DNA of 63,861 nt, filler included, from Reticulomyxa filosa (GCA_000512085.1; 18 parts of 18 records of this genome joined end to end with filler, not necessarily neighbours in it), one strand, 5' to 3'; positions 36,040-56,196 are shown, counted from the whole stretch's first letter. Translations and numbers: made by a program. The notes: generated by a model from the sequence alone, not told the origin.

Positions 36040-36329
36040 AAANNNNNNNNNNNNNNNNNNNNNNNNNNNNNNNNNNNNNNNNNNNNTTAATTAATTAANN
36101 NNNNNNNNNNNNNNNNNNNNNNNNNNNNNNNNNNNNNNNNNNATTTGAAAAAATGTTGATTTCATCCAACAAAAAAAAAAGTTATTTAAAAACTACAATA
36201 CTTATAGATATTTTTTAAAAAAAAGTTAGGTCTGAATGTTGATTTTTCATTGAGAAAATCAATTATCATCATAAGATATCGTTTTATGCGTTCAGTTTTC
36301 TTTGCAACATACTGTACAAATGCCAATAT

Positions 36330-36760
36330 TATGTTCTTCAAATATTTGTAATTGTTTATTATCTTTAACATCCCAAAAACGAATTGTTTTATCATTTGAT
36401 GAAGAACAAATAACATTACGATTATTATTATAATGATAATATTGTGAAAATTTTACACAATATATATAACTTGAATGTCCATTAAATAATCTAATTTGTT
36501 TATTATTATTTATATTTCATACACGAACTGTTTTATCATTTGATCCAGAACAAGTTAATTGATTATTATCAAATATTGAATAATCAATACTATATATATA
36601 TTATCGGTATGTCCATTTAATGTTTTAATTAATGTTGAGCATTATAATGATCTTTGCCTATATTAAATTAAATTAAAAAAAACATAACATAATTGACAAT
36701 AAATTTGTAAAAATCATTGATCCATCCTAATTTAATATTTAATCACCAAATAAATATAAT
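36330..36760 (-). pseudogene. Truncated, AT-eroded copy of the expanded WD40 family
   Basis: Aligns by eye to 39540-39990 (IKLGWI..F.KF, SIDYS, CSGSNDKTVRV, CVKFSQY, NVICSSSNDKTIRFWD) but carries indels and ends after about two repeats. Confidence 0.75.
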
Positions 36761-37000
36761 CAAAGGATAAAAGACAAGAAATTTGAGGAAACTTACTAAT
36801 GCTGATTGAGCTCGTTTTTTATTATTGAAAAAATTTGAGCTCAAGAAAAGTGGAAGGGTGTGCTGTTAAAAATAATTTAAAATGAAATTTCAATTTGACA
36901 TATGTATGATACTTTTCTAAATGAAAAATAAACAATTAATGTGCACGTGTACACACTATTTTCAAGAAAAACCCTTTTTTCTTACACTCAAATTAAGTCC

Positions 37001-38212
37001 ATGGAAGGAGAAACTCTTGTAAATCAATGTACATTATCAGGTCACACTAGTTGGATAACGAGCATTGCGGTAGCACCTGATAATAACACAGTACTAACAG
37101 GAGGTCGAGATAAAACAATTGCCGTATGGAAACTGTCAAGAGGAGAAAAAAAAAACGCAAAAATTGAAGGCACTTTAATGAAAAGATTGATTGGTCACAA
37201 TCATATTGTTAGTGCCATTGACATATCCGTTGATGGTTTAAACGTATTATCATCCTCATGGGATGGGACAATACGGTATTTTTTTTTTTTTTTAAAAAAT
37301 TTAATAATATATAACATTTTTTTATTTTCTTACAACAGATTATGGGACTTGCAAACTGGTGATTGTTGTCGTTTATTCAAAGGCCATAAACAAGAGGTTA
37401 TGTCTTGTGCATTTAGTGTAGATAATCAGTATGTGGTCTCTGGTTCAATGGACAAATCGATTCGCATTTGGAATATGTTAAGACAAGAAAATTATATATA
37501 TTTTTTTTTTTTTGTTTTAAAAAAAATATACATATATTTTGTTTTAATTGAAACATTGTTAGAAAAGGAAAAATGCTAAATTCATTGGAAGGAAATGATG
37601 GTCATCGAGATTGGATAAACTGTGTGCGATTTTCGCCAGATGAAAAAGATCAATTAATGTTGAGCTGTGGTCGAGACAAGATTGTAAAGGTGTGGGATTT
37701 GAAAAACAATATTGGCATTTTGAAATATACTTTAATTGGACACACCAATTGTGTTAACAGTGTAATCGTATCTCCTGATGGATCTTTATGTGCTAGTGGT
37801 GGAAAAGATGGAGTCATTATGTTTTGGGATCTTCTTAATGGAAAGAAATTGGCCAGTATTAAAGCTGATGGTGAAATTAATGATTTATGCTTTTCACCTA
37901 ATCGATATTGGTATATTACTTTTTGTATTTATATGTAATTATGTAATAATAATAAATAACAATATTTGATAAAAAATTAAAAGGATATGTAGTGCTGTTG
38001 GATCATCAATAAAGATATGGGATTTGGAGACAAAGGAGATAATTGGATTAATTAAAAATCTTGAAGAAATAAAACATGATCAAGAAGAAAAAAAAGGAAA
38101 GAAAAAACATCCATTACCAATTTTGTGTACCTCTTTGAAATGGTCTCATGATGGAAAAACTCTCTTTGGTGGATACTCAAATGGAAAAATTCGCATTTGG
38201 TCTTTCGTTTGA
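37001..38212 (+). CDS. RACK1: RACK1-like WD40 protein (divergent), 4 exons
   Basis: TLSGHTSWITSIA, RDKTI..W.L, GHNHIVS...S.DG...LSSSWDGTIRLWDL, GHRDWINCVRFSP, VSPDGSLCASGGKDG, LCFSPNRYW and CTSLKWSHDGKTLFGGYS..KIRIW are RACK1-specific. Confidence 0.85.
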
Positions 38213-38770: not shown

Positions 38771-40148
38771 TTATCCCCAAATACGAATAGATCCTCCATG
38801 TGAACCATAACATAAATTAATACCACAGCCAGAATAAGCATTGCTTTTACTTTTATTCTCTTTCTTTAATGGTAAAAATTTAATACATATTATTCCAAGA
38901 TCTTCTTCGTCATATCCATTGATCACATGCAATTCTTTTTTATTTGATCGAATATCCCAAAAACGAATTGTATTATCACCCGATGCAGAGCATATCACAT
39001 TTGAACTGCTACCAACTTCGAGATTCTTTACTACAAATGGTGAATATTCGACACCCCATACAGAATTTTTGTGTCTATCAAACATTTGAATTTGTTGACC
39101 AGATCGAATATCCCACAAACGAACACTAGTATCAAATGATCCAGATAATATTGTATTTACTAATTCATTTGATCCATATTTTACACTTCGTACTGAACTA
39201 TCATGTCCTTTGAATACAATACATTGTTTTGTCGTTTCAATATCCCATATATAAATGGTTTCATCAAATGATCCTGAACAAATAGTATATCCATTACCAC
39301 CAATCACACCAATATCATTAATTTTATTATTATCATTTCTGTTACTGTTATTGCTTTGCAATGGTGAAATATCCACGCACCAAATACGACCTTTATGTCC
39401 ATTGAAAGTATGTAATAATTTGGATGTTTTAACATCCCACAAACGAATAGTATAGTCAAATGAGCCAGAACATAGATATCGACCACCATTAAATGGTGAA
39501 AATTCAATTCCACAAACAGCAGACGTATGTCCATTGAATATTTGTAATTGTTGATTATCTTTGAAATCCCAAAAACGAATGGTTTTATCATCTGATGAAG
39601 AACAAATGACATTACGATGATTGTTATAATAATGATATTGTGAAAATTTTACACAAAACACATAGCTTGAATGTTTATTGAATAATTGGATTTGTTGATT
39701 GGTATCTACATTCCATACACGAACTGTTTTATCCTCTGATCCAGAACAAATGAATTCATTATCACCGAATGTCGAATAATCAATACTCCACACAGCATTA
39801 GTGTGCCCAATGAAAGTCTCTAGTAATTTGGATGAACGAAATATGTCAAGCATGAAGAAGTTAGTTGTCTGTTTAAAAAAAAGGATAAATATTTGATAGT
39901 TACTGAACGAAACAAAAAAAACATAACATAATTGACAACAATTTTGTTAAATTCCTGAATCCACCCTAATTTAATTTTTAATATCCTAATCCAATATTGG
40001 ATAATTAATTGGATCTTTTCTTCTTCTAACTATGATTCAATCAAAAAATCTCGTACAATGAATACAACTAAAACCTGAAGACAACTAGTTTTCTGAAACA
40101 TACTAATGTCAGTTGTGATTGTTTGTTTTCATTTCCATGAGCGATCAT
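38771..40148 (-). CDS. WD40-repeat protein of a lineage-expanded family, 3 exons
   Basis: About seven WD40 repeats in ORF 38771-39853. Upstream exons MIAHGNENKQSQLTL and EEEKIQLIIQYWIRILKIKLGWIQEFNKIVVNY are joined by GT-AG introns. Confidence 0.9.
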
Positions 40149-41113: not shown

Positions 41114-44100
41114 TCAAAAAGTACCATTGCATCGTTCAACAACTGACTTCTGCAATAAAGTCAAGCCTTTTGCATCTTTCCAGATGCTACCTTTCAATGA
41201 CAAAAAACCCTGAGTACCAAACCGCCAAATGCATTTCCACAAGGAAATTTGTTTATCTTGTGAACCTGATCCACGTTGATTGTCATGTGCAGAAGGATAA
41301 ACCACATTTAAATTGCTTGGAGTATCATATAAATCGGTAATACAAACAGGAGATTGTTTCCACAATCGAATAGTATTGTCGATTGAACCTGAAATGATTC
41401 TTGAGCCGTCACGTGAAAATTCAACAGAAGTAATAGAGTGTGAGTGTCCTTCAAGAGATTGAAGTTGTTCACCGGACGATACGTTCCACAATCGAAAATC
41501 ATCATTTGAACTAGACACAATTTTTGAACCATCAGGTGAAAATTGAACGCAAGTAACCTGTGATAAATGACCTTCTAGAGATTGAAGTCGTTTACCAGAA
41601 GATACGTCCCACAACCAAATATTTTTACCCGAACAAGATGCAATTTTGGAGCCATCAGGTGAAAATTGAACAGAACTAATATAAGATAAATGGCCGTTCA
41701 GAGAATATAGTTGTTCACCAGAAGATACGTTCCACAATCGAATTTCACCATCTGAACCAGATGCAATTTTTAAACTGTCAGGTGAAAATTGAATACAAGT
41801 AACCTGAGATAAATGGCCGTTCAGAGATTGAAATTGTTTACCAGAAGATACATCCCACAATCGAATAACATTTTCTGAACAAGATACAATTCTAGAACCG
41901 TCAGGTGAAAATTCAATACAACTAATATAAGAGAGGTCTCTTTCTAAAGAATAAATATTTTTGCCAGATGATAAATCCCAAATTTGAATTATGTTATCTC
42001 TTGAAATAGACACGACTTTAGAACCATCAGGTGATAATTTAAAAAGTTCATATTGTTCTTCGAAACATTGAAGTTGTTTACCAGAAGATACATCCCACAA
42101 CCGAATGGTGCGATCAAATGAACTGGACACAATTTTGGAAGTATCAGGTAAAAATTTAACAGAAGTAACTCGTTTTAAATGTCCTTCCAGAGATTGAAGT
42201 TGTTTCCCGGACAACGCATCCCACAATCGAATAATGTTGTCATATGAGCCTGATACAATTTTCGAACCGTCAGGTGAAAATTGAACAGAGCTAACACTAT
42301 TCATATGTCCTTCCAAAAATTGGGATTGACTACCAGAAAATGCATCCCACAGTCCAATAGTTGTATCCTTCGATCCTGACACAATTCTTGAGCCATCAGG
42401 TGAAAAGCTGACAGAAAAGATATCAAATAGATGTCCTTCAAAAGATTGGATCAGTTTGCCCGATGATACATCCCACAAGCGAATGGTTTTATCCCAGGAA
42501 CAAGATACAATTTTGGAAGAATCTGGAGAGAATTCAACAGAAGTAACACTTGACAAATGTCCTTCAAAACATCGAAGTTGTTTACCAGATAATGCATCCC
42601 ACAATCGAACAGTACAATCATATGAACCTGACACAATCTTCAAACCGTCAGGTGAATACTGAACAGAAGTCACACCAGCCAAATTGCCTTTTAGAGATTG
42701 AATTTGTTTGCCAGAAGATAGGTCCCAGAATTGAATATGATTCTCTGAATTGGATACAATTTTGGAATCATCAGGTGAAAATTTAACACAAGTCACACCG
42801 GATAAATTTTCTAAACATTGGAGTTGTTTTCTAGATGATACATCCCATAATCGAATAGTATTGTCAATTGAACATGACACAATTTTTGAACCATCAGAAG
42901 AAAAGTGAACCGAACTAATATAATCTGAATGACCTTCCAGAGACAGAATTTGTTTAGCAGATGATACATCCCATAATCGAATGGTTTTGTCACCTGAACC
43001 TGAAACAATTTTTAAACCATCACGTGAAAATGCAACAGAGCTAACACAGTTTGAATGTCCTTCAAGACATTGAATTTGTTCACCTGATAATGTATCCCAC
43101 AATCGAACGGTATTATCATCCGAGCCAGACACAATTTTTGTACCATCAGGTGAAAATTGAACAGAGTTAATAGCATCTAAATGTCCTTTAATATAACCAT
43201 ATTCACCAAAGTTGACATGATTTACTGTTGCGTTTGTGAAATTGGCGTAGTTGAGGAATGCATGAAAAAATTTGACATGATCTAAATTAGCTTCATTGAA
43301 ACTGGTTCTCTCAAGGAAGGCATAATCTAAAATGGCATGTGGTATATTTACTTTATTCCAATTTTGATTGTTCAGACTAACTCTTGCAACATTAAGTATG
43401 GTAACAGCATTAGCTGCTGCAATAGACACAATTGGATTATTTTTGGATGATTCAATGATTCGGAATAATCGTGATTTCAAATTTGCATAAATTGGATTTG
43501 TGTCACAAACTCTATCTGCAATAAATTGAATAATTCCAAATTGTTCATTTAATAATTTACAATTGATAAGAAGATGTTGAACATTTGTTTGAAATTGTTG
43601 TTGAAATTGTTGATTATCAATATCGACAAGATGGTTAACATTAGGTTTCCATGAAATAATATCAAAGATAATTTTTTGAGCAGAATAATATTCTTGACAA
43701 GATTTATGTAAGAATTGATATTTGTTATCACCAACTCTTCTTAATACATATCTAGCAATACTATCACCATTGAAATATTTTTCCCAAATATCTTGTGTTT
43801 TTGTAATTGAAATATCAGCTAACTCATCTGTTGTATTTGTCTCTATTTTTTCATCCATAAAATAATTTTTTTTACTTTCATCATTATCATCATTTTTTAT
43901 AATTGGATCTAATTTATTTAATATTATCTCATGGTCGTTTATATACTGAAAATCTTGTTCAATTGCAACTTGATTTCCTTGAATAAACATATCAAATCCT
44001 AAATCAAGACAATACTGTTTTAATTTGTATTTAATTTTATGGATATTCATGTTTATTCGTAATTCGGATAATTTAGATAATATGTTTTGCGTATGAATAT

Positions 44101-46531
44101 CAATCCATTGATCATTAAATACTTGATAAACTTGTGCTTTAGAAATTTTTGTTCCAGTACCATATTGTTTAACTAATAAAGGTAAAATAGTTAAAATAAG
44201 TTGAAGAAGAAAAGGTTCTTCGATCATTTTTAATAAATTAGGATAATTATTTAAAGTTTCTTGATATTGTTTTAATGTCCAATAATTATTATTTTTTATT
44301 TGAATGTTTGCAAATTTTTCAATATAATTGCGCATTTGTTGTTTTGTAAATGGCCATAAATGTATCATTGAAGTTATAACATTATGTTGTTTTTTATTTA
44401 TACCAATTAAACTTGTATTAACATCTTCATCACTTAAAGCATTACTTCTACAAGTAACAATAATTTTAGCATTCCATTGATTTAAATTAAAACGATCATA
44501 AAAATATTGTTCATATTCATTAATACTTTTACGATAAAAATCATATATTTCATCAAATCCATCCATAATAAAAATAAAAGATATTTGTTCACGAATATTA
44601 TTAATAATCTCTTTATTAATATTTTTATTTTGTAATGCTTGTAAAATAATATCTTTATCATTATTTTTATTGTAAATATTTGGAAATGATATATAAATTG
44701 GAATCGGCTGCTTTGAATTAGATTTATAATTATTCCATAATGTTTCTTCTAAATAACGACAGAAAATACTTTTTCCAGATCCTGATTTTCCTTGAATAAT
44801 CATTATTTTTTATTGTTGTTCTACTTTCTTTTCTTCTTCTTTTTCCTTTTTTTCTTCTAAAAATTCAATTACATGTTGATAACAATCAAAAGTTTCATTT
44901 TTTTCATTGTGTTCACTTTCTATATATGCATAACGATTTGCTTGCAGCGGTATATATGTTTCAAGCGCTTGTGATATAGTAATATCTTCTTCTATTTCTT
45001 GCTTTCTTGATTCTTGCAATAATAATGCAAAATCAGCACAATTTGCAGGATTATTGTCACCAATAATATATTGTTTATAATATTCATATAATATAACATA
45101 AATAGCTTTATCTTTTTCTTTTTCTGGAATAAATGTACATAATTGTTCATAAATAAATTGTGATAGTTTTAATATTATATCATTTTGTATTTCAAAATTT
45201 GTTTTTTTTAATAATTGTGATGGTTTTAATATTATAATATCTAAATGTGGCTTATATCGTTCAGATATTTTTTTAATTATTTTATCATTAACCCATTCAC
45301 ATACAATATCATTAATTTTTGTTAGTGTTTCTTCTGTTGCATGTTTTAACTTTTCTTCTTCTTTTGTATTAATATATTTCCATGATCTAATATATCCATA
45401 AAGTATATGACTTAATTTTGGATTTTCCATTTCTGTATAACCTTCTAATAATGTATATTTTTTTAATGTTGCTTGCATTTCTATATATATATCATATTTT
45501 GGCACATATAATTTAATATTATGTGTTCTATGATGTGTTGTTGATTGTTTATCGAAAAAATTTTTATCTTCGGACACAATTAAATTAAATTTTCCCGCTT
45601 TCTTCATTACTTCTACTGCGGTTTGTAATTTTGTAGGATTATCACATAAAATAGTAAATCTTCCAACATCAAATACTCTATTAAAATCACCTTTATAATC
45701 ATATTTAATTTTTTCTAATAATCTTTCTTTATCTTTTACTTTTGGTTTTACAATCGTAATACCATATTTTTGTAATTCTGTTATCAAACTTATTATTTCA
45801 ATACTTTTCATTGCATTTTCACTTCTTGTTATTAAATCCTCTATGCTTTCTGCATGTTGTTTAATTCTATTTGCTTTTAATTCATATATTAGGCTTGATT
45901 TAATTGGATAAACGGCTTGATAGTTATAGTTATTTTTATATGATATACCATCATTAGTAGAAATAGAATGCTCTGCATTAAAAAACATTACTTTCATTAT
46001 TGATGCAACTGTTAAGTTTAGACAATCAGGGCATGTAAATGACGTTTTTTCTGGATCAAGCGTCATATCTTTAAATCCTTCATTTACCCAAACAAATAAT
46101 TTTGCATTTGCTACTAGACAATTTTCATTTGTGCAATAACCTTGTAAATTAATTCCTGATTTAATATCTCCAACTTCTGGTTTTTCATCTTCTTTTTTTA
46201 ATTGTTCAGATTTTTGCTCTATTTCGTTTGCTTGAATTCTTTGATTATCATTTTCCTATTTTTGTTTTTTAATAGTAATATATATGTATATATATTCTTT
46301 ATAAAGACACACATTCTGATCCATCGATGTTGAAACCATTGTTTCAATCACAGCTAATACATTTCCATCGCTTTCTTCTAGCCTTTTTTTCAATTCTTCT
46401 TCTTCATTGGCATCATCAAATAATCTTTTTAACACCTTCATTTCCTTTGAATAATTTTTTATTTTACGTTCGTGCTGCATACTCCCTAAGAGTTTAACAG
46501 ATTTCTTATCCTTGTGTACGAAATCGTTCAT
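41114..46531 (-). CDS. NLR-like STAND protein: helical (UBA-like) N-terminus, Cys4 Zn module, RelA/SpoT-like nucleotidyltransferase, NACHT, pentapeptide repeats, 15 WD40; one in-frame TAA at 44810-44812
   Basis: Exon 1 is 46531-46313, followed by a GT-AG intron and then one frame from 46255 to 41114. Motifs: GINLQGYCTNENC...CPDC, KVKDKERLLEK...DVGRFTI...IEMQAT, Walker A GKSGSGKS, Walker B FIFIMDGFDE, IIVTCR, YQFLHKSCQEYY, AAANAVTIL plus pentapeptide repeats, and 15 WD40 repeats. Confidence 0.85.
41355..43190 (-). repeat. Tandem array of 15 highly similar WD40 units (about 123-126 bp each)
   Basis: The consensus GH...V.SV.FSPDGSKIVSGS.D.TIRLWD.SSGKQLQSLE is repeated 15 times, and similarity is visible at the DNA level. 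Confidence 0.9.
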
Positions 46532-47601: not shown

Positions 47602-50600
47602 TTACGAGAAAAAACTGTAGGAAGATGTTTTGCCATTGCTCAGCTGCAAAAAATTAAAATATGAATTGTGGCAATCAAAAAGAAATTCAAAACAAAAATC
47701 TAAAAAAAACGCAACAACAAAAGAAAAAAAAAGATTTGTACACAGCATTTATTGTTGATGGGATCAAGAGCATCGTCTAATTTAACAAAATCGTCACTAA
47801 TGCGACTCTTTAAAGTTGGTGGTGTGGGAATAATAATAGGCGAGTCTTCTAAGCACATGTTTGATGAACCATGAATATTGTTTTTGGATAATGTCTTTGT
47901 TTGTTTGAATGTTGTATCGGGATCGCTTTTTAGTTGTTTCTCCGTGCTTGTGTCGGATACGACTTGTCTCCGATGATGGGGTGGTGACGTTGAGTACAGT
48001 TTGTTGCATCCACTGTGAGAAAAAGGTTGTCGTCGATCGGAGATTACCAAATAGGATTCCTCCGCACTCCGTGGGCTCAAATTCCAAGACTCGGGATAGC
48101 TATGTGACTGTTGTGGCTCGGTCTTGTCAGAGAAGCCATGACTAGAAAACAAACAAACAAAAATGTGTATATACATATACATACATGGATGGTAAGAAGG
48201 GATAAAAGGTATAATGAACTCGGAATATTTAGTTTTGGCAGATGTATGTTCATCCGCACTGGGACGTCGACAAAACGAGTCGATCACATGTGCGTTTTGA
48301 TGTGTGACAAAGCCATTGCTGTTGGTTTTCTGATGGATGTGAAAGGACTCGGGAACGGCACGATTGCAGTAAAGACTCTTCATAATTGCATTTTTAGGTT
48401 TGCCATCGGAACGTGTGGCATCACCATTACCACTCCTAACGGAGTCGCCAACGGATAAATGATTTGGATGTTGAGATAAGAGTCTTGGGAGTGGTTCATT
48501 GCTCGGACTTTTCAAAAATTGATCGGGTGTTATTCTGTTGTTGTGATGATGATGATGATGACTTGCAACATGAGACGTATTGACATTGGTATATCTTTCA
48601 CTGCGAGAAGATTTCGGAGACCAACTGTTGACAATGTGATAGTCATCAAACATACTTTTAGGCGAAGTCGAGCCTTGAGATTCTTTGTCCTCTATTTGAT
48701 CGTGTAACACAAAAGCCGGAGAAGAGGTGTCCAAGTTGGGCTCTTCACACGATATCGCTTTCGACTTGGACGTCGTCGTTATTGTTGTTGCTCCACGTAG
48801 GTCTGTTTCTGCTTCGTAAATACAAGAGAGACCATCTTTGATTGGATCTGTTTCTTGGGGATCATGACTTGACACATCTGTTTCCCATGCTTCATCACAA
48901 GACTTAAGCAAAGGCGATTGTCTCTTTGTCTCCTCTTGGTGCTGGCCGTGGAGTGCCAACGGGGTAATGTTCGACGTGACGATCCATGAGTTGGCAAGAT
49001 TCTCTTTCGTTTCATGGAGCAAAGGACTGTCATGGATGGAAGCCACTTCGGGTCGCATGTACGCATGCATGTGCGCATGAGCTGCCACTTGGGGACGTCT
49101 GCATTGGCTGTCCGAGCTGACTACGCAGCAAGATGAACTTTCGTCGGTGACAACATCTGATTGTCTGTGAGTTTCCATGGATTTTGTTGTGATATCTGGC
49201 TCTTTGTTTTCCTCTTCGACCTGATCTCTTGCCATCAATTCATGCATTGGGAAGTACTCCTAAAATATATAGGTATGTATGTATGTATGTATTGACTCAA
49301 AAAGTAGAAGTGACACATCGACTCAACTTCGACCAAATTGGTGTCCGTCTCAATTCTGCCAAAGTATTGACTAAATTCGCGAAACCTTTGACTGTACTTT
49401 GGATCCAAGTGCACCATGCGTCCTTCAAGTTCGGTGGACAAGATAAGTTCTTTGGAGTCATCATGAGAAGACAGATCCAGTTCGTCGTCTGGACACTCGG
49501 ATGGCGCCTGCAATTGTTGGCATTCGACGACATGTGGATCGCTGTCAATCGTTTCTGCGTCAATGTCTTCGGTGTCGTGACAAAGCACCAATTGCTGTTT
49601 CTGCTGGGCGAGACGCACCAATGGGATTTGCTTCAAGCTGCTCACCTCGCACGCCGTGTTCATGTCAACGGAAAAGATGGGGCTGTGATCAGCTTGACAG
49701 AGGTGTGATTGGAGAGCTGACTTTGTTCAGACTTGGGATTGATTGCATTGTGTTTGGCACACTCGTGCAAAGTTGGCTTGGTAGCGTGCCATTTCAACTG
49801 GCGATCGTGAATAGGACTCAGCTGCTCCAGCACCAATTGCGAGTTGGTCAATGGCGACAATGTGATGGCCGTTGTAGTCGTATTTATTGTTGTATTTGTT
49901 GTCATATTTGTTGTCATATTTGTTGTCACATTTGTTATATCCACCGATAAATGGCCATCTTGACAGGTATGGCCCAAATTCGTGGCACGTTGCAACTGAA
50001 ATTGGCGTTGCATTGATTTCAAAAGTTGTTTCTTGGTATCTTGTTCGACGTGTGTCTTATGATAGTCGCGCTTTTGCGGGATGAGGAGGTGCAGGTCGTC
50101 AAACAGCGGACTCAGACACAACTTGATAAAGGCATCGGCGTTGGACAACTCTGGACATGGCTCCCGCAGGGCCATCAACATATCTTCAAATTTATTGGCT
50201 TTCAACAGTGCGTCTTTGCGGAGCAGCAATATGGCCAAGGCCGTTTTGAATGTCATGACAATCCCTTCGGAAAACGTGATATCCCAAACGCGCAGTGTGG
50301 TTTCGTAGGGAAGCGTGGTAACAAAGAGACACAGAAACCAATCCACGGTCACTGTGGACAGATTGAACTGTACGTCTTGCAAGTGCTGATATATTTCTGG
50401 CATTTTGATTTCAATCAGATCCAAAAACACACATTCGTCCACAAACGCTCCGAGCAAATCGCTTTCGTGATAATAAAATCCGCCCGCGCGACATATGTCT
50501 TCCACTACTGTGCACAACATCCAAAACGCTTCCTCCTCGTCCATGAACAGCAACAGCAGCGCACCCACGATGTTCATTGACTGACAGTACCCCACACAAG

Positions 50601-52569
50601 GATTGCGTTGGCTGTACGCCGTCAATATCTGTCGCAGTATATCCACCGCCTTTTCGTTCCTTTGCTTTTCGTCAAATGGAAATGTACGCTTCAAGTCCTT
50701 TTCCATTATCGAGTCTTTGTTTTTACTTTGACGCGCTTTCTCTACTAGTTGTTCGTAGTATCGCGGACATTGCTTTTCTATCTCTTTTCGTCGTTTGTTG
50801 CATCCCGAAGTATGGGTCCATATCTTTTTTTTTTTTTCATTCCCCTGCCCCCTTTGTCATAGCCAAAAACAATATTGTATATATGCATATAATAATATAC
50901 ACCCAAAAACTTTGGATACCAAAAAAAAAAAAAAAATAACTCAATCAAATCTTAACAGAACCCCTGAGAAATGGAGGAATTCCTCTTCGGATCATTTCTT
51001 TTAATTCCGAGTTTGTCCCTTCCATATGCATGTGATGCGCCAAGTATTTCTTCCACCACTCGTGGTCTATTTTGGCGTATGTCTTTTGCTTGCTCTTGTT
51101 GTTCCCCACTTCGTGTGTGCCTTGGTTGTGTTGTCCCAATCGAAAGGGCAACAGCTCTTGTGAAAACGTCAATCCGTTATTGTTGCCCTTGTCTTCTTTT
51201 TTTTCCACAAATCCCAGTCCACCCTTTTTTTGTTTTGTTTTATTCAATTTGAAAATAATCACTTGTTCCATCCGACTCAATCCTCAAAAAAAAAAAAAAA
51301 AAAAAAGGGTCAATTTGTGCTGAGACGAAGGATATGTACACTATCAGATAGATAAAAAAAAGTATAAACAAATAGAAATTATAACAAAGTTGGCACGGTC
51401 AGCAATTAATTGTCGAAAACACTGTTTGCAAACTCTTACAACGTCATGTATACCTTTGTCTGGCATTACTGCTGTCTCTGTTTCCGTGTTGTTATTTGTG
51501 TATACGTCGCAAAAATTGTACGATAGATGTATATGTACACCCATACGTTTTTTTTTAAAAATTTGTTTTAATTGGGGAAAAAAAAAACAAAATAAATGGT
51601 CATATATACCGGAAGAACATGTTGCACAAACAACTTGCCCACAAGACCTGCAATGATGTTTTCTATTTGAAAAAGTGAACACATCATTGCAAATATCACA
51701 GTGGGTCACATCTTCATCTGGAATCCATTCTGCTGGGTTGTCTACTTCTTGATGCTGTTGCCATTGTTTTTTTGTTTTTTGTTTTTTATTAAAATCAATT
51801 GTTTATCTTTCCATTTACATATTTCGATACACAAATATATAAATATATGCACATATGATTTTTTTTTGCTGTTGTTGTTCTAGCCCCTCCAGCTCCCTCC
51901 CCTCTGCATTTCAGTTACGTGAGAAGGCACACAGTGAAAATTCTCCATTCACGAAACTTCAATAGTGATGCGTATGTTCATTTCAGTTAATCGTTGTGCA
52001 CATAAGTCTCTTTTCTAATGTTTATTTGTTTTGTTTTGTTTGCTCACTTTTCAGACATCATTTGTCTTTTTTTCTTGTTTTTGTTTCTTCATAGTGTGGA
52101 GAATTAAAGAAAAGCGTATAACGACGAAATATCACCTCTTTGGATTGAAACAACAAGTCCCAAGAAGGGTATTTGTTGCCCTCAAATACTACAATTAATC
52201 GTATATCATCTTTTGTCGAGCTTATAATTCTACTCATTGTTAGACTGTCCATTTGTACACTTTTTTGTGAATCTATATTTTTCTTTATGCTAATTTCTGA
52301 TGTCTTGAAATCCAATTCCAAGTAGCGCTATTTTTTTATTCGTTGTCAATATATATGTATATAAATAATTTTTTTTTTGGAAACACTTGGTTGTCCCGAA
52401 ACTCTGTTTTATTTATTGGATTTGTAAATACCTCTTGTTTATTTGCCGAACGCAAGTTTTTCACAACAAAGTGTTCTTTTGTTGACGTCCTGCAGTCTAC
52501 AGTTTTGTATGCTTTAATTGCATCACCCGTGCCAACCGAGGGCTTAGATCGACTAAAGATTTGGAGCAT
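47602..52569 (-). CDS. FYVE-domain and TBC (Rab-GAP) domain protein with a long disordered C-terminus, about 10 exons
   Basis: FYVE: [13 protein letters not shown]...[17 protein letters not shown]...[11 protein letters not shown]: [25 protein letters not shown] (R finger), GYCQSMN (Q finger), EEEAFW, WFLCLF and RVWD. The N-terminal exons may be PH-like, and the 3' end is approximate. Confidence 0.85.
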
Positions 52570-55759: not shown

Positions 55760-56196
55760 TTAATTGTCACCTGCATCATCGCCAGCGTTATCACCGACAT
55801 CATCAGTTGGTTGTTCACTCAAAACATCCAGATAATCTTTTTCCAAGAAGCCTAAGTCTTCACGGGCTTCAGCAAATTCTCCTTCTTCCATTCCTTCTCC
55901 TACGTACCAATGCACAAATGCTCTTTGGGAGTACATGATGTCATACTTTTGGGCAATGCGTTTACTAAACACTCGCGAAATGCCCGTGTTGTTGGCTATC
56001 ATCACAGCATTTTTACTAAATGCTCCAATATCGTCTGATTCCAGTGTTACTGCTGGTACCTCATTTAAGCCTATCTTGAAACCAGTTGGGCACCACTCGA
56101 CTAATGTTATTTTATTGCTCGATTTCAGCCATTGGACCGTTGCGTTTGCTTCCTTCGATTTTAAATCACCACGATAATTTAAGGAAATGGCCATAT
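55760..56196 (-). CDS. Alpha-tubulin, divergent (foraminiferan alpha-2 type), C-terminal part
   Basis: YRGD, VEWCPTGFKIGLN and RAFVHWYVGEGMEEGEFAEAREDL..LEKDY identify alpha-tubulin. There are many substitutions relative to canonical alpha-tubulin and a non-canonical tail. Confidence 0.92.

What the first reader, a model, noticed from the sequence alone, without database searches (positions are those of the whole stretch)
41114..46531. NLR-like receptor with a RelA/SpoT-type (alarmone-synthetase-like) effector domain in a rhizarian protist
Seen in sequence: upstream of a NACHT-pentapeptide-WD40x15 module, about 45760-45450 encodes KPKVKDKERLLEKIKYDYKGDFNRVFDVGRFTILCD...DKNFFDKQSTTHHRTHNIKL...IYIEMQATL. 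Established knowledge: RelA/SpoT synthetase domains have the order R.K...S...K, D..G.R+, Y.S.H, +E+Q+RT with catalytic Asp and Glu. Both acidic residues are present here (DVGR, EMQ), while the GY motif is replaced by HH. RelA_SpoT N-terminal effectors are known on some fungal and bacterial NACHT proteins. Inference: this is a sensor-switch-enzyme innate-immune or cell-death receptor. Ligand binding to the WD40 propellers would trigger NACHT oligomerisation and activate a pyrophosphotransferase making (p)ppGpp/(p)ppApp, or modifying tRNA as toxic small alarmone synthetases do. An upstream Cys4 module (C-x4-C...CPDC) and a UBA-like helical N-terminus suggest coupling to ubiquitin. I know of no characterised example in Rhizaria.
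Basis: partly seen in the sequence, partly recalled or inferred. Interest (0 to 1): 0.88.

Follow-up and report, generated by a model that had tools for sequence, protein, structure and literature searches.

The report
Alarmone-synthetase-like NLR gene in a foraminiferan
This is one copy, cut in two by a single stop codon, of a very large Reticulomyxa-type gene family. The family fuses a bacterial-toxin-like RelA/SpoT (Tas1-type) nucleotide pyrophosphokinase domain to a NACHT-WD40 "immune receptor" chassis, an arrangement known so far only as a rare type in fungi.

Summary
On the minus strand, 46531-41114 encodes, in order:
- a CUE/UBA-like helical module;
- a Cys4 beta-sandwich;
- a RelA/SpoT-homologue (RSH) synthetase-fold domain;
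- a helical region;
- NACHT;
- pentapeptide repeats;
- 15 WD40 repeats.

The RSH call rests on three lines of evidence:
- phmmer against PDB finds only Tas1, a (p)ppApp-synthesising type VI toxin (E 4.6e-5).
- 20 of 29 aligned family members (the window plus 28 paralogs) hit Pfam RelA_SpoT.
- An AlphaFold model matches Tas1 and the small alarmone synthetases (Z 12.6-11.8).

The Mg-binding Asp, the Glu-x-Gln and the basic triphosphate-binding helix are kept in more than 95% of 85 paralog domains. The acceptor-loop Gly-Tyr is His-His, or His-Tyr in 11 of the 85.

All N-terminally complete Reticulomyxa filosa NACHT paralogs that I fetched have the same architecture. In total, 139 fetched proteins or fragments carry the domain.

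Two caveats apply:
- This copy has an in-frame TAA (44812-44810) in the A-rich linker between effector and NACHT, where the intact paralogs I aligned read through. It may be a recent pseudogene, a variant or an assembly error.
- No activity, product or expression could be tested.

RelA_SpoT-NACHT-WD40 NLRs are already described in fungi, so this is a new variant of a known kind. It differs by its kingdom, its huge expansion, its Tas1-like clade and its extra domains.

The parts
46313..46531 (-). Exon 1: start codon at 46531 and a CUE/UBA-like three-helix module (K-Y-x-K-E-M...L...G-N-V...V-I pattern).
   Evidence: Conserved in about 45 paralogs (jackhmmer). 10 of 28 paralogs hit Pfam CUE, best E 2.5e-4. 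The best PDB match to the profile is the USP25 UBA-like domain, E 0.068. The window copy itself has no Pfam hit.
46256..46312 (-). Putative 57-nt intron: GT..AG, in phase, AT-rich, ending in an in-frame TAG.
   Evidence: Read from the sequence. Paralog proteins align on both sides without needing these 19 codons. Splicing was not verified because no RNA runs were listed.
45860..46183 (-). Cys4 beta-sandwich domain (piece residues 25-132) of unknown family.
   Evidence: The AF2 model has pLDDT 91.8. The four Cys, plus G-I-N..G and W, are invariant in 25 paralogs. There is no Pfam hit and no convincing PDB match (best Z 5.6). In the ESM Atlas, TM is 0.70-0.75 to unnamed eukaryotic domains fused to ubiquitin, RING or ART.
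45293..45850 (-). RelA/SpoT-homologue (small alarmone synthetase / Tas1-like) nucleotidyltransferase-fold domain (piece residues 136-321). Key codons: K174, R178, K182, D196 (45670-45668), R199, H241-H242 (45535-45530), E259/Q261 (45481-45473), H283, Y286.
   Evidence: phmmer against PDB finds Tas1 (6OX6), E 4.6e-5. Foldseek's top hits are Tas1 at E 2e-5, then SAS1, SAS2 and RelP. VIA-align gives Tas1 Z 12.6, SAS2 12.2, SAS1 12.1, RelP 11.8, Rel 11.2 and CapRel 10.3. 20 of 29 alignment members hit PF04607, and P0010 scores 27.9 bits against a cut-off of 27.
44954..45292 (-). Helical region between the RSH core and the linker (piece residues 322-434).
   Evidence: The AF2 model shows helices at pLDDT 80-95. 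There is no Pfam hit. Only generic four-helix matches (Dps-like, Z about 6) were found. CapRel aligns out to residue 393.
44813..44953 (-). Low-complexity Glu/Lys/Gln-rich linker (A-rich DNA).
   Evidence: pLDDT is below 50 for residues 435-455. The region is variable in the alignment.
44810..44812 (-). In-frame TAA stop between the effector half and the NACHT half.
   Evidence: The intact paralogs aligned there carry a sense codon and read straight into ..MIIQGKSGSGKS. No GT..AG segment that keeps the frame spans it.
44312..44803 (-). NACHT NTPase domain: Walker A G-K-S-G-S-G-K-S, Walker B hhhhD-G-F-D-E.
   Evidence: PF05729 at E 2.6e-9, 37.6 bits against a cut-off of 26.7.
43394..44311 (-). 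NACHT-associated helical/winged-helix region (no named family).
   Evidence: No Pfam hit. It is 65-70% identical to paralogs.
43199..43384 (-). Pentapeptide-repeat segment.
   Evidence: PF00805 at 27.6 bits (cut-off 20.2) and PF13599 at E 2.6e-8. NCBIfam HetL at E 2e-4.
41351..43192 (-). Array of 15 WD40 repeats (126-nt period).
   Evidence: Pfam WD40 has 15 stretches, E 6e-155. TRF finds period 126 with 13.8 copies at 67% matches.
41114..41350 (-). C-terminal tail and stop codon. The last WD repeat of paralog P0061 is replaced here by divergent sequence. The terminal W-K-C-I-W...S-I-W-K-D...L-T motif is kept.
   Evidence: BLASTP against P0061. No alternative frame hides a WD repeat.

Best explanation
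The locus is one member of a very large Reticulomyxa-type (foraminiferan) family of STAND/NLR-like proteins with a fixed architecture. In order, the domains are: a CUE/UBA-like module, a Cys4 beta-sandwich, a Tas1/Apk1-like RelA/SpoT-homologue (RSH) pyrophosphokinase domain, a helical region, NACHT, pentapeptide repeats and about 15 WD40 repeats.

Shown:
- The domain identities.
- The RSH fold.
- Retention of the ATP/Mg2+-binding and catalytic residues across paralogs.
- The family expansion.

Inferred: by analogy with other NLRs, a ligand bound by the WD40 propellers releases the NACHT switch. Oligomerisation then brings the N-terminal RSH domains together and activates them. The RSH domains transfer pyrophosphate from ATP to an acceptor. 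The most likely acceptor is an adenine nucleotide, giving a (p)ppApp-like product as with Tas1. A tRNA 3' end, or a new acceptor, remains possible because the acceptor loop is His-His instead of Gly-Tyr. The outcome would be ATP depletion or translational arrest. That would mean local growth arrest or death of part of the syncytium in response to non-self.

In this particular copy, a single in-frame TAA in the A-rich linker separates the effector half from the NACHT-WD40 half. As assembled, the copy would give only a free effector-half protein, or nothing. It is most simply a very recent pseudogene, an allelic variant or an assembly error.
For: RSH homology:
- phmmer against PDB finds only Tas1, E 4.6e-5, with K-x3-R-x3-K, DYKGD and D-x-x-R-x-T aligned.
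- A second weak stretch aligns the H..Y..R motif.
- 20 of 29 alignment members hit PF04607 at E<=0.01, and P0010 and P0034 reach the gathering score.
- An AF2 model (pLDDT 80.6) gives an unbroken block of RSH enzymes as the top 11 VIA-align hits, Z 12.6-8.0. RSH enzymes also fill the top of the Foldseek list.

Active site, mapped on the FaRel2 residues given in PMC11782079 and on alignment A4:
- K174, K182, D196, R199, E259, Q261, Y286 and R290 are invariant out to distant bacterial-type relatives.
- Counts in 85 paralog domains: D196 84, E259 82, Q261 81, K174 83; position 242 is H in 71 and Y in 11.
- The RSH domain is the most conserved of the three N-terminal modules aligned: mean column identity 79%, against 62% for the beta-domain and 44% for the CUE-like module.

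Architecture and family:
- NACHT, pentapeptide and WD40 are confirmed.
- The locus is colinear with the 1851-aa paralog P0061.
- Every N-terminally complete R. filosa NACHT paralog fetched has the beta-domain and RSH upstream.
- 139 fetched proteins carry the RSH profile.

Precedent: RelA_SpoT-NACHT-WD40 NLRs are listed in fungi (PMC4986451; PMC12258605).
Against: - The window copy itself gives no Pfam RelA_SpoT hit, even at E<=10.
- The acceptor-stacking Tyr of the G-loop is His here. Substituting that Tyr with Phe is the standard way to cripple RSH enzymes (PMC11782079).
- The ORF is interrupted by TAA at 44812-44810.
- The last WD repeat is degenerate.
- No sequencing run was listed, so neither expression, nor splicing, nor the stop codon could be checked.
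- No NLR-linked RSH domain has a demonstrated activity in the papers read.
- The immune or cell-death role rests on analogy only.
Confidence: 0.6

Rival explanations
1. This copy is simply a dead gene. The TAA is real, the mRNA is degraded or yields only a truncated N-terminal protein, and nothing functional comes from this locus. This says nothing against the family being functional.
For: There is an in-frame TAA with no possible frame-keeping intron. The last WD repeat is degenerate relative to P0061. A second paralog (RFI_28085, locus L054) is also broken at the same A-rich linker, there by a frameshift in an A-run. This shows that the linker is mutationally fragile. It is made of AAA/GAA/CAA codons, each one step from TAA.
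Against: The 1229 codons after the stop are fully open in 22-37% GC DNA, where stops accumulate fast. All motifs (Walker A/B, WD40) are intact. So the lesion must be very recent, or an assembly or allelic artefact. It could not be checked with reads.
Confidence: 0.4
2. The RSH domain is a tRNA 3'-CCA pyrophosphokinase, like CapRel, FaRel2 and PhRel2. It would stop translation rather than make a free alarmone.
For: CapRel is a strong structural match over the longest span (Z 10.3, 174 residues, model 136-393). toxSAS enzymes of both kinds share the fold and the ATP site (PMC11782079). The altered G-loop argues against a standard guanine or adenine nucleotide pocket.
Against: By sequence, only Tas1, a (p)ppApp synthetase, is found in PDB. 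The family shares the Tas1-type DYKGD and D-x-x-R-x-T signatures. No tRNA-binding N-terminal extension was identified.
Confidence: 0.2
3. The RSH-like domain is catalytically inactive. It would serve as a nucleotide-binding regulatory module or an oligomerisation/adaptor module. The real output would then go through the CUE/UBA-like and Cys4 domains, for example by recruiting ubiquitin machinery.
For: The G-loop Tyr is replaced by His in 71 of 85 paralogs. Pfam scores are borderline. The N-terminal modules have weak CUE/UBA similarity. The Cys4 domain resembles, by shape, a domain fused to ubiquitin or RING elsewhere.
Against: The Mg2+-binding Asp, the Glu-x-Gln and the basic helix are conserved in more than 95% of paralogs and out to bacterial relatives. 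That is hard to explain without catalysis. His can stack on a base as Tyr does, and 11 paralogs keep Tyr.
Confidence: 0.15
4. The split is functional. Either stop-codon read-through or re-initiation gives both a free effector and a full-length receptor, or the effector and the sensor work as two polypeptides.
For: The downstream ORF is intact, and an ATG lies 9 nt after the stop. A second paralog is split at the same junction.
Against: That Met is part of the conserved beta-strand before Walker A in uninterrupted paralogs, so it is not a dedicated start. The second split is a frameshift in a homopolymer, typical of error or decay. More than 40 paralogs are continuous. Re-initiation after a roughly 550-codon ORF is inefficient in eukaryotes (established knowledge).
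Confidence: 0.05

Closest known systems
Fungal NLRs with an N-terminal RelA_SpoT domain (RelA_SpoT-NACHT-WD40; Dyrka et al. 2014, PMC4986451; Sordariales survey, PMC12258605)
   Same: The logic and the order are the same: an RSH synthetase-type domain at the N-terminus, a NACHT NTPase, and C-terminal WD40 repeats. The organism is also syncytial and capable of fusion. In both cases the biochemistry of the RSH effector is uncharacterised.
   Different: - In fungi this is a minor type: under 1% of N-terminal annotations, and 17 or so among about 4600 Sordariales NLRs. It is one of many interchangeable effectors.
- Here it is the only architecture seen for this NACHT family, and it is expanded to many dozens of copies.
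- This family has extra CUE/UBA-like, Cys4 beta-sandwich and pentapeptide modules.
- The organism belongs to a different eukaryotic supergroup (Rhizaria).
- I could not test whether the fungal and foraminiferan RSH domains belong to the same clade.
Tas1/Apk1, the type VI secretion (p)ppApp synthetase toxin of Pseudomonas aeruginosa (PDB 6OX6), and related bacterial toxin-type RSH domains
   Same: It is the best sequence and structure match. Both share the K-x3-R-x3-K basic helix, DYKGD, D-x-x-R-x-T, E-x-Q and H..Y..R motifs. More distant relatives of the same clade sit at the extreme C-terminus of long bacterial proteins, or next to eCIS or phage Mu-F modules. They occur in Myxococcota, cyanobacteria, Desulfobacterota and actinobacteria.
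   Different: - Identity is only about 20% over the fold.
- The gene is eukaryotic, with an intron and AT-rich DNA.
- The domain is fused to a STAND receptor rather than to a secretion module.
- No immunity protein is apparent.
- The G-loop is His-His, whereas the distant relatives have G-Y-R-D.
Small alarmone synthetases (RelQ/SAS1, RelP/SAS2) and toxSAS enzymes (FaRel, FaRel2, CapRel)
   Same: They share the five-stranded nucleotidyltransferase core and the ATP-donor site residues.
   Different: No sequence-level hit to these was found in PDB searches. There is no hydrolase (HD) domain and no antitoxin-like zinc-finger domain. The context is different.

Membership tests
RelA/SpoT homologue (RSH) synthetase domain, Pfam PF04607 | Profile match at or above the Pfam gathering score | tested here: inconclusive
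   The window copy has no hit, even at E<=10. 20 of 29 alignment members hit at E<=0.01. P0010 scores 27.9 bits and P0034 27.0 bits against a cut-off of 27. A distant relative found with the family profile, P0156, scores 40.6 bits.
RelA/SpoT homologue (RSH) synthetase domain, Pfam PF04607 | Nucleotidyltransferase alpha/beta fold of SAS/Rel synthetase domains | tested here: met
   AF2 model residues 136-321: Tas1 Z 12.6 (169 aligned, rmsd 4.1), SAS2 Z 12.2, SAS1 Z 12.1, RelP Z 11.8. The top 11 VIA-align hits are all RSH enzymes. Foldseek gives Tas1 at E 2e-5.
RelA/SpoT homologue (RSH) synthetase domain, Pfam PF04607 | Mg2+-coordinating catalytic Asp on strand beta2 (FaRel2 D90) | tested here: met
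   D196 is invariant in A4 and present in 84 of 85 paralog domains.
RelA/SpoT homologue (RSH) synthetase domain, Pfam PF04607 | Glu-x-Gln on strand beta5 (FaRel2 E145/Q147) | tested here: met
   E259 and Q261 are invariant in A4. They are present in 82 and 81 of 85 paralogs.
RelA/SpoT homologue (RSH) synthetase domain, Pfam PF04607 | Basic helix binding the donor triphosphate (K..., S/R..., K) | tested here: met
   K174-x3-R178-x3-K182 aligns to the Tas1 K-x3-R-x3-K. K174 and K182 are invariant.
RelA/SpoT homologue (RSH) synthetase domain, Pfam PF04607 | G-loop Gly-Tyr, whose Tyr stacks on the acceptor base | tested here: not met
   The window has H241-H242. Distant relatives have G-Y-R-D in the same columns. 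Position 242 is His in 71 and Tyr in 11 of 85 paralogs.
RelA/SpoT homologue (RSH) synthetase domain, Pfam PF04607 | Pyrophosphate transfer from ATP to the 3'-OH of an acceptor | not testable with these tools
   This needs biochemistry.
NLR-like STAND receptor (NACHT clade) | NACHT domain with Walker A and Walker B | tested here: met
   PF05729 at 37.6 bits against a cut-off of 26.7. G-K-S-G-S-G-K-S and F-I-M-D-G-F-D-E are in the translation.
NLR-like STAND receptor (NACHT clade) | C-terminal superstructure-forming repeats as the presumed sensor | tested here: met
   15 WD40 stretches, preceded by pentapeptide repeats.
NLR-like STAND receptor (NACHT clade) | N-terminal effector domain on the same polypeptide | tested here: inconclusive
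   This holds in more than 40 paralogs. In the window copy, an in-frame TAA at 44812-44810 separates the two halves. Its reality could not be checked with reads.
NLR-like STAND receptor (NACHT clade) | Role in non-self recognition, immunity or regulated cell death | not testable with these tools
   Inference from architecture and from lineage-specific expansion only.
UBA/CUE ubiquitin-binding three-helix modules | Profile match to UBA or CUE | tested here: inconclusive
   The window exon 1 has no hit. 10 of 28 paralogs hit CUE (PF02845), with best E 2.5e-4, below the cut-off. The best PDB match to the profile is the USP25 UBA-like domain, E 0.068.

The most novel reading that the evidence does not exclude
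A syncytial foraminiferan maintains many dozens of NLR-type receptors whose executioner is an active Tas1-like pyrophosphokinase. That would make alarmone-type nucleotide synthesis, with (p)ppApp-like ATP depletion, a cell-autonomous eukaryotic immune or allorecognition effector. The family-specific His-His acceptor loop would specify an acceptor, and therefore a product, not seen in bacterial RSH enzymes.
Probability: 0.25. Interest if true: 0.85.

Novelty: new variant of a known kind. Interest (0 to 1): 0.6.

Why it matters
RSH enzymes are known as bacterial and plastid stress regulators and, more recently, as bacterial toxins (Tas1, toxSAS, CapRel). As NLR effectors they have been listed, but never studied, in a few fungi.

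Here a protist from a different supergroup has made this combination its dominant NACHT architecture, and it keeps the catalytic residues under visible constraint.

This gives a rich natural series for asking three questions:
- What does an NLR-coupled RSH domain make?
- How does oligomerisation switch it on?
- Did giant fusing cells (foraminifera, filamentous fungi) independently adopt bacterial toxin domains for non-self control?

The series has 85 or more domains, with His-His and His-Tyr acceptor loops.

Tried and rejected
- Pfam and NCBIfam on the window's N-terminal 481 aa gave nothing. The family only becomes visible through paralogs, PDB phmmer and structure.
- A profile of the whole N-terminal alignment was weaker against PDB than the single sequence (E 0.08 against 4.6e-5).
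- The Cys4 beta-domain has no Pfam family, no PDB fold above Z 5.6 and only unnamed Atlas look-alikes. I rejected the readings 'zinc ribbon' and 'UBR box' because the hits were at E>0.009 and scattered.
- I looked for an intron that would remove the TAA at 44812-44810. The only GT..AG candidate is 34 nt. It is out of phase and would delete the conserved strand before Walker A, so I rejected it.
- I looked for a hidden frameshift in the degenerate last WD repeat and found none.
- TAA read as a sense codon is rejected. Paralogs of 1700-1990 aa are annotated in the standard code without internal stops.
- Read support and expression could not be tested, because no run was listed.
- The search for related loci with the mixed alignment A4 had no stretch conserved enough to search with. 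A bacterial-only alignment worked.
- Apparent 'giant ORFs' around some Myxococcota matches gave no supporting domains. They are probably open frames of high-GC DNA, so I drew no conclusion from them.
- The read-through protein (effector plus NACHT joined) was not submitted to any tool.

Full report
**Observation.** The piece 36143-56196 carries a long gene on the minus strand between 46531 and 41114. They show three in-frame blocks:
- 46531-46313, starting with ATG;
- 46255-44813 (481 codons);
- 44803-41117 (1229 codons).

The first two blocks are separated by a 57-nt AT-rich GT..AG segment (46312-46256). It is in phase and ends in TAG. Paralog proteins align on both sides without needing it, so I read it as a small intron. 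This is inferred, not shown.

The second and third blocks are separated by one in-frame TAA (44812-44810), followed by K-I-M-I-I-Q-G-K-S-G-S-G-K-S. No frame-keeping intron can remove it.

**The C-terminal half.** Pfam gives:
- NACHT in residues 1-164 (37.6 bits against a cut-off of 26.7);
- pentapeptide repeats (PF00805, 27.6 bits against 20.2);
- 15 WD40 stretches.

The WD40 array is seen by TRF as a 126-nt period with 13.8 copies at 67% matches. Walker A and the D-G-F-D-E Walker B are intact.

**The RelA/SpoT question.** The window's 481-aa piece has no Pfam or NCBIfam hit. Four other results support the assignment.
- phmmer against all PDB sequences finds a single significant chain: Tas1 (6OX6), the Pseudomonas type VI toxin that synthesises (p)ppApp, at E 4.6e-5. 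The alignment covers K-x3-R-x3-K, D-Y-K-G-D and D-x-x-R-x-T. A family profile adds a second weak stretch over the H..Y..R motif.
- The piece has 60 homologues at E<=1e-3, 59 of them annotated Reticulomyxa filosa proteins and one an unnamed JGI protein. The best is 67% identical. Scanned individually, 20 of 29 aligned members hit PF04607 RelA_SpoT at E<=0.01. P0010 and P0034 reach the gathering score, matching profile positions 3-89 of 113.
- An AlphaFold2 model built on the paralog alignment (pLDDT 80.6) was searched against PDB. Foldseek ranks Tas1 first (E 2e-5), followed by SAS1, SAS2, RelP and the exported alarmone synthetase.
- The Foldseek-independent VIA-align search of 48,161 chains gives Tas1 Z 12.6, SAS2 12.2, SAS1 12.1, RelP 11.8, Rel 11.2 and CapRel 10.3. 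The top 11 rows are all RSH enzymes, ahead of generic nucleotidyltransferases at Z below 8.

The fold assignment for residues 136-321 (window 45850-45293) is therefore secure.

**Active site.** PMC11782079 lists the FaRel2 donor-site residues: R64, K66, S70, K74 and R77 on the triphosphate, D90 on Mg2+, G93, R95 and Q147 on adenine, E145, and the G-loop Y128 for the acceptor. A full HMMER scan of 1.84 billion representatives with the domain profile returned 95 hits. I aligned the more distant ones with the window (A4).

Invariant across the whole alignment are K174, K182, Y187, D196, R199, E259, Q261, Y286 and R290 (numbering of the 481-aa piece). R178 and H283 are nearly invariant. The spacing from E259 back to position 242 equals that from FaRel2 E145 to Y128. 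The distant relatives have G-Y-R-D exactly where the window has T-H-H-R.

Across 85 paralog domains, position 242 is His in 71 and Tyr in 11. D196 is kept in 84, E259 in 82, Q261 in 81 and K174 in 83.

Of the three N-terminal modules I aligned, the RSH domain is the most conserved. Its mean column identity is 79%, against 62% for the beta-domain and 44% for the CUE-like module. This pattern is what one expects of a working enzyme whose acceptor pocket has changed. It does not prove activity.

**Family and organism.** Using the NACHT region as query, 80 proteins were found, about 70 of them R. filosa proteins of up to 1990 aa. An hmmsearch with the RSH and beta-domain profiles shows that every N-terminally complete one has beta-domain and RSH upstream of NACHT. 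I saw no alternative N-terminal effector on this NACHT clade. In total, 139 fetched proteins or fragments carry the RSH profile. P0061 (1851 aa) is colinear with the window gene from end to end.

The window's own proteins are not in the protein collection. The best identities are 67-70% for this gene and 63-64% for the neighbouring RabGAP gene, always to R. filosa. So the source is either R. filosa sequence that is absent from the annotated assembly, or a close relative. I call it Reticulomyxa-type.

**Other modules.**
- Exon 1 is conserved in about 45 paralogs. It is weakly CUE/UBA-like: 10 of 28 paralogs hit Pfam CUE, best E 2.5e-4, and the USP25 UBA-like domain scores E 0.068.
- The Cys4 segment is not a free zinc finger. 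It is part of a confidently modelled beta-sandwich (pLDDT 91.8). It has no Pfam family and no convincing PDB match (best Z 5.6).
- By shape it matches (TM 0.70-0.75, 98-106 residues) an unnamed domain of rotifer and Mucoromycota proteins that also carry ubiquitin, RING or ADP-ribosyltransferase domains.
- The helical region 322-434 has no assignable family.

**Relatives outside the family.** The distant hits include:
- RSH+TPR and Ank-RSH-NACHT proteins from metagenomes;
- a protein with an eCIS core domain and a C-terminal RSH;
- a phage Mu-F/SPP1 gp7 fusion;
- a 3127-aa protein;
- a Guillardia theta protein;
- an MMETSP transcript.

A scan of one genome per bacterial species with the bacterial-type subset found 53 loci. 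They are mainly in Myxococcota, filamentous cyanobacteria, Desulfobacterota and actinobacteria. In 15 of the 25 loci checked, the domain ends about 20-45 residues before the stop of a longer protein. That is the layout of polymorphic-toxin C-terminal domains.

The foraminiferan domain therefore belongs with the Tas1/Apk1-like toxin clade rather than with housekeeping Rel/SpoT. There is no HD hydrolase domain. The published Apk1/Tas1 homologue lists contain no Reticulomyxa entry.

**The stop codon.** The intact paralogs aligned there have a sense codon at the TAA position, inside a Glu/Lys/Gln-rich linker. The linker DNA is made of AAA, GAA and CAA codons, each one step from TAA. Another paralog (RFI_28085, locus L054) is broken at the same junction by a frameshift in an A-run. 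So the linker is a fragile spot.

The 1229 downstream codons are completely open in DNA of 22-37% GC. The lesion is therefore recent, allelic or an assembly error. No sequencing run was listed, so this stays open.

I describe the break only.

**Mechanism.** Shown: the domain identities, the fold, the residue conservation and the expansion.

Inferred from established NLR/STAND behaviour and from Tas1/toxSAS biochemistry:
1. The WD40 propellers bind a ligand.
2. NACHT exchanges nucleotide and oligomerises.
3. The clustered N-terminal RSH domains become active and transfer pyrophosphate from ATP to an acceptor.

Tas1-like affinity favours an adenine-nucleotide acceptor and ATP depletion. The His-His loop leaves room for tRNA (CapRel-like) or for a new acceptor. 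In a giant, fusing, multinucleate cell, the likely use is containment of infected or incompatible cytoplasm, by analogy with fungal heterokaryon incompatibility (PMC4986451, PMC10197012). I put about 0.6 on an active pyrophosphokinase effector in an NLR-type switch. I put about 0.4 on this particular copy being dead.

**Comparison and novelty.** RelA_SpoT-NACHT-WD40 proteins are already catalogued as a rare fungal NLR type with no biochemical study. No paper in the library pairs Reticulomyxa with NACHT, and none of the listed papers pairing Rhizaria with NACHT is about such a family. The sequences are public but annotated only as hypothetical or NACHT/WD40 proteins.

I therefore rate this a new variant of a known kind. 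It has the same logic as the fungal type, but it differs in four ways:
- it is in Rhizaria;
- it is the sole and massively expanded architecture;
- its RSH domain is of the Tas1-like clade with an altered acceptor loop;
- it has added CUE-like, Cys4 beta-sandwich and pentapeptide modules.

Noticed in passing
window 38771-39853 (-), 36941-37938 (+), 36262-36600 (-): Three further WD40-repeat stretches lie downstream of the NLR gene. One is a 360-aa ORF with 6 WD40 hits. They are only 25-40% identical to the family's WD40 array, and there is no NACHT or RSH next to them. They may be separate WD40 genes or remnants.
   Followed up: partly
window 49660-50706 (-) and 47700-49247 (-): A RabGAP-TBC gene (PF00566, E 1e-45) lies here. 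It is followed on the same strand by a 515-codon Ser/Thr/His-rich low-complexity ORF with no Pfam hit, probably its disordered tail. The best protein matches are R. filosa at only 63-64% identity. So the window is not identical to the annotated R. filosa proteins.
   Followed up: partly
window 55760-56194 (-): The C-terminal part of a tubulin gene (PF03953, E 3e-14) is cut off by the edge of the piece.
   Followed up: no
window 41143-43142 versus 44143-46142: GC content is 36-37% over the WD40 array but 22-24% over the effector half of the same gene. This could reflect repeat homogenisation or biased gene conversion in the WD40 repeats.
   Followed up: no
L054 8380-8450 (R. filosa ASPP01024156.1): Paralog RFI_28085 is annotated as a 477-aa effector-only protein. 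A run of A's at the effector/NACHT linker shifts the frame. The NACHT-WD40 part is called as a separate 1177-aa gene with a wrong start. Such split annotations probably hide many family members.
   Followed up: yes
P0120 (RFI_08856, 1027 aa): This R. filosa protein carries two tandem copies of the beta-domain+RSH unit (residues 25-322 and 399-704) before a NACHT domain. It may be a duplication or an annotation that fuses two genes.
   Followed up: no
P0131 (ETO26992.1, 1017 aa, 'vcbs repeat-containing protein'): This R. filosa protein has the RSH domain at residues 710-908, far from the N-terminus and without a Pfam-detectable NACHT. It could be a different architecture using the same effector.
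   Followed up: no
ESM Atlas clusters matched by model m6e445cd78c1d: The Cys4 beta-sandwich looks like an unnamed, widespread eukaryotic domain. It is fused to ubiquitin, RING or ADP-ribosyltransferase domains in rotifers and Mucoromycota (TM 0.70-0.75). It may deserve a family definition of its own.
   Followed up: partly
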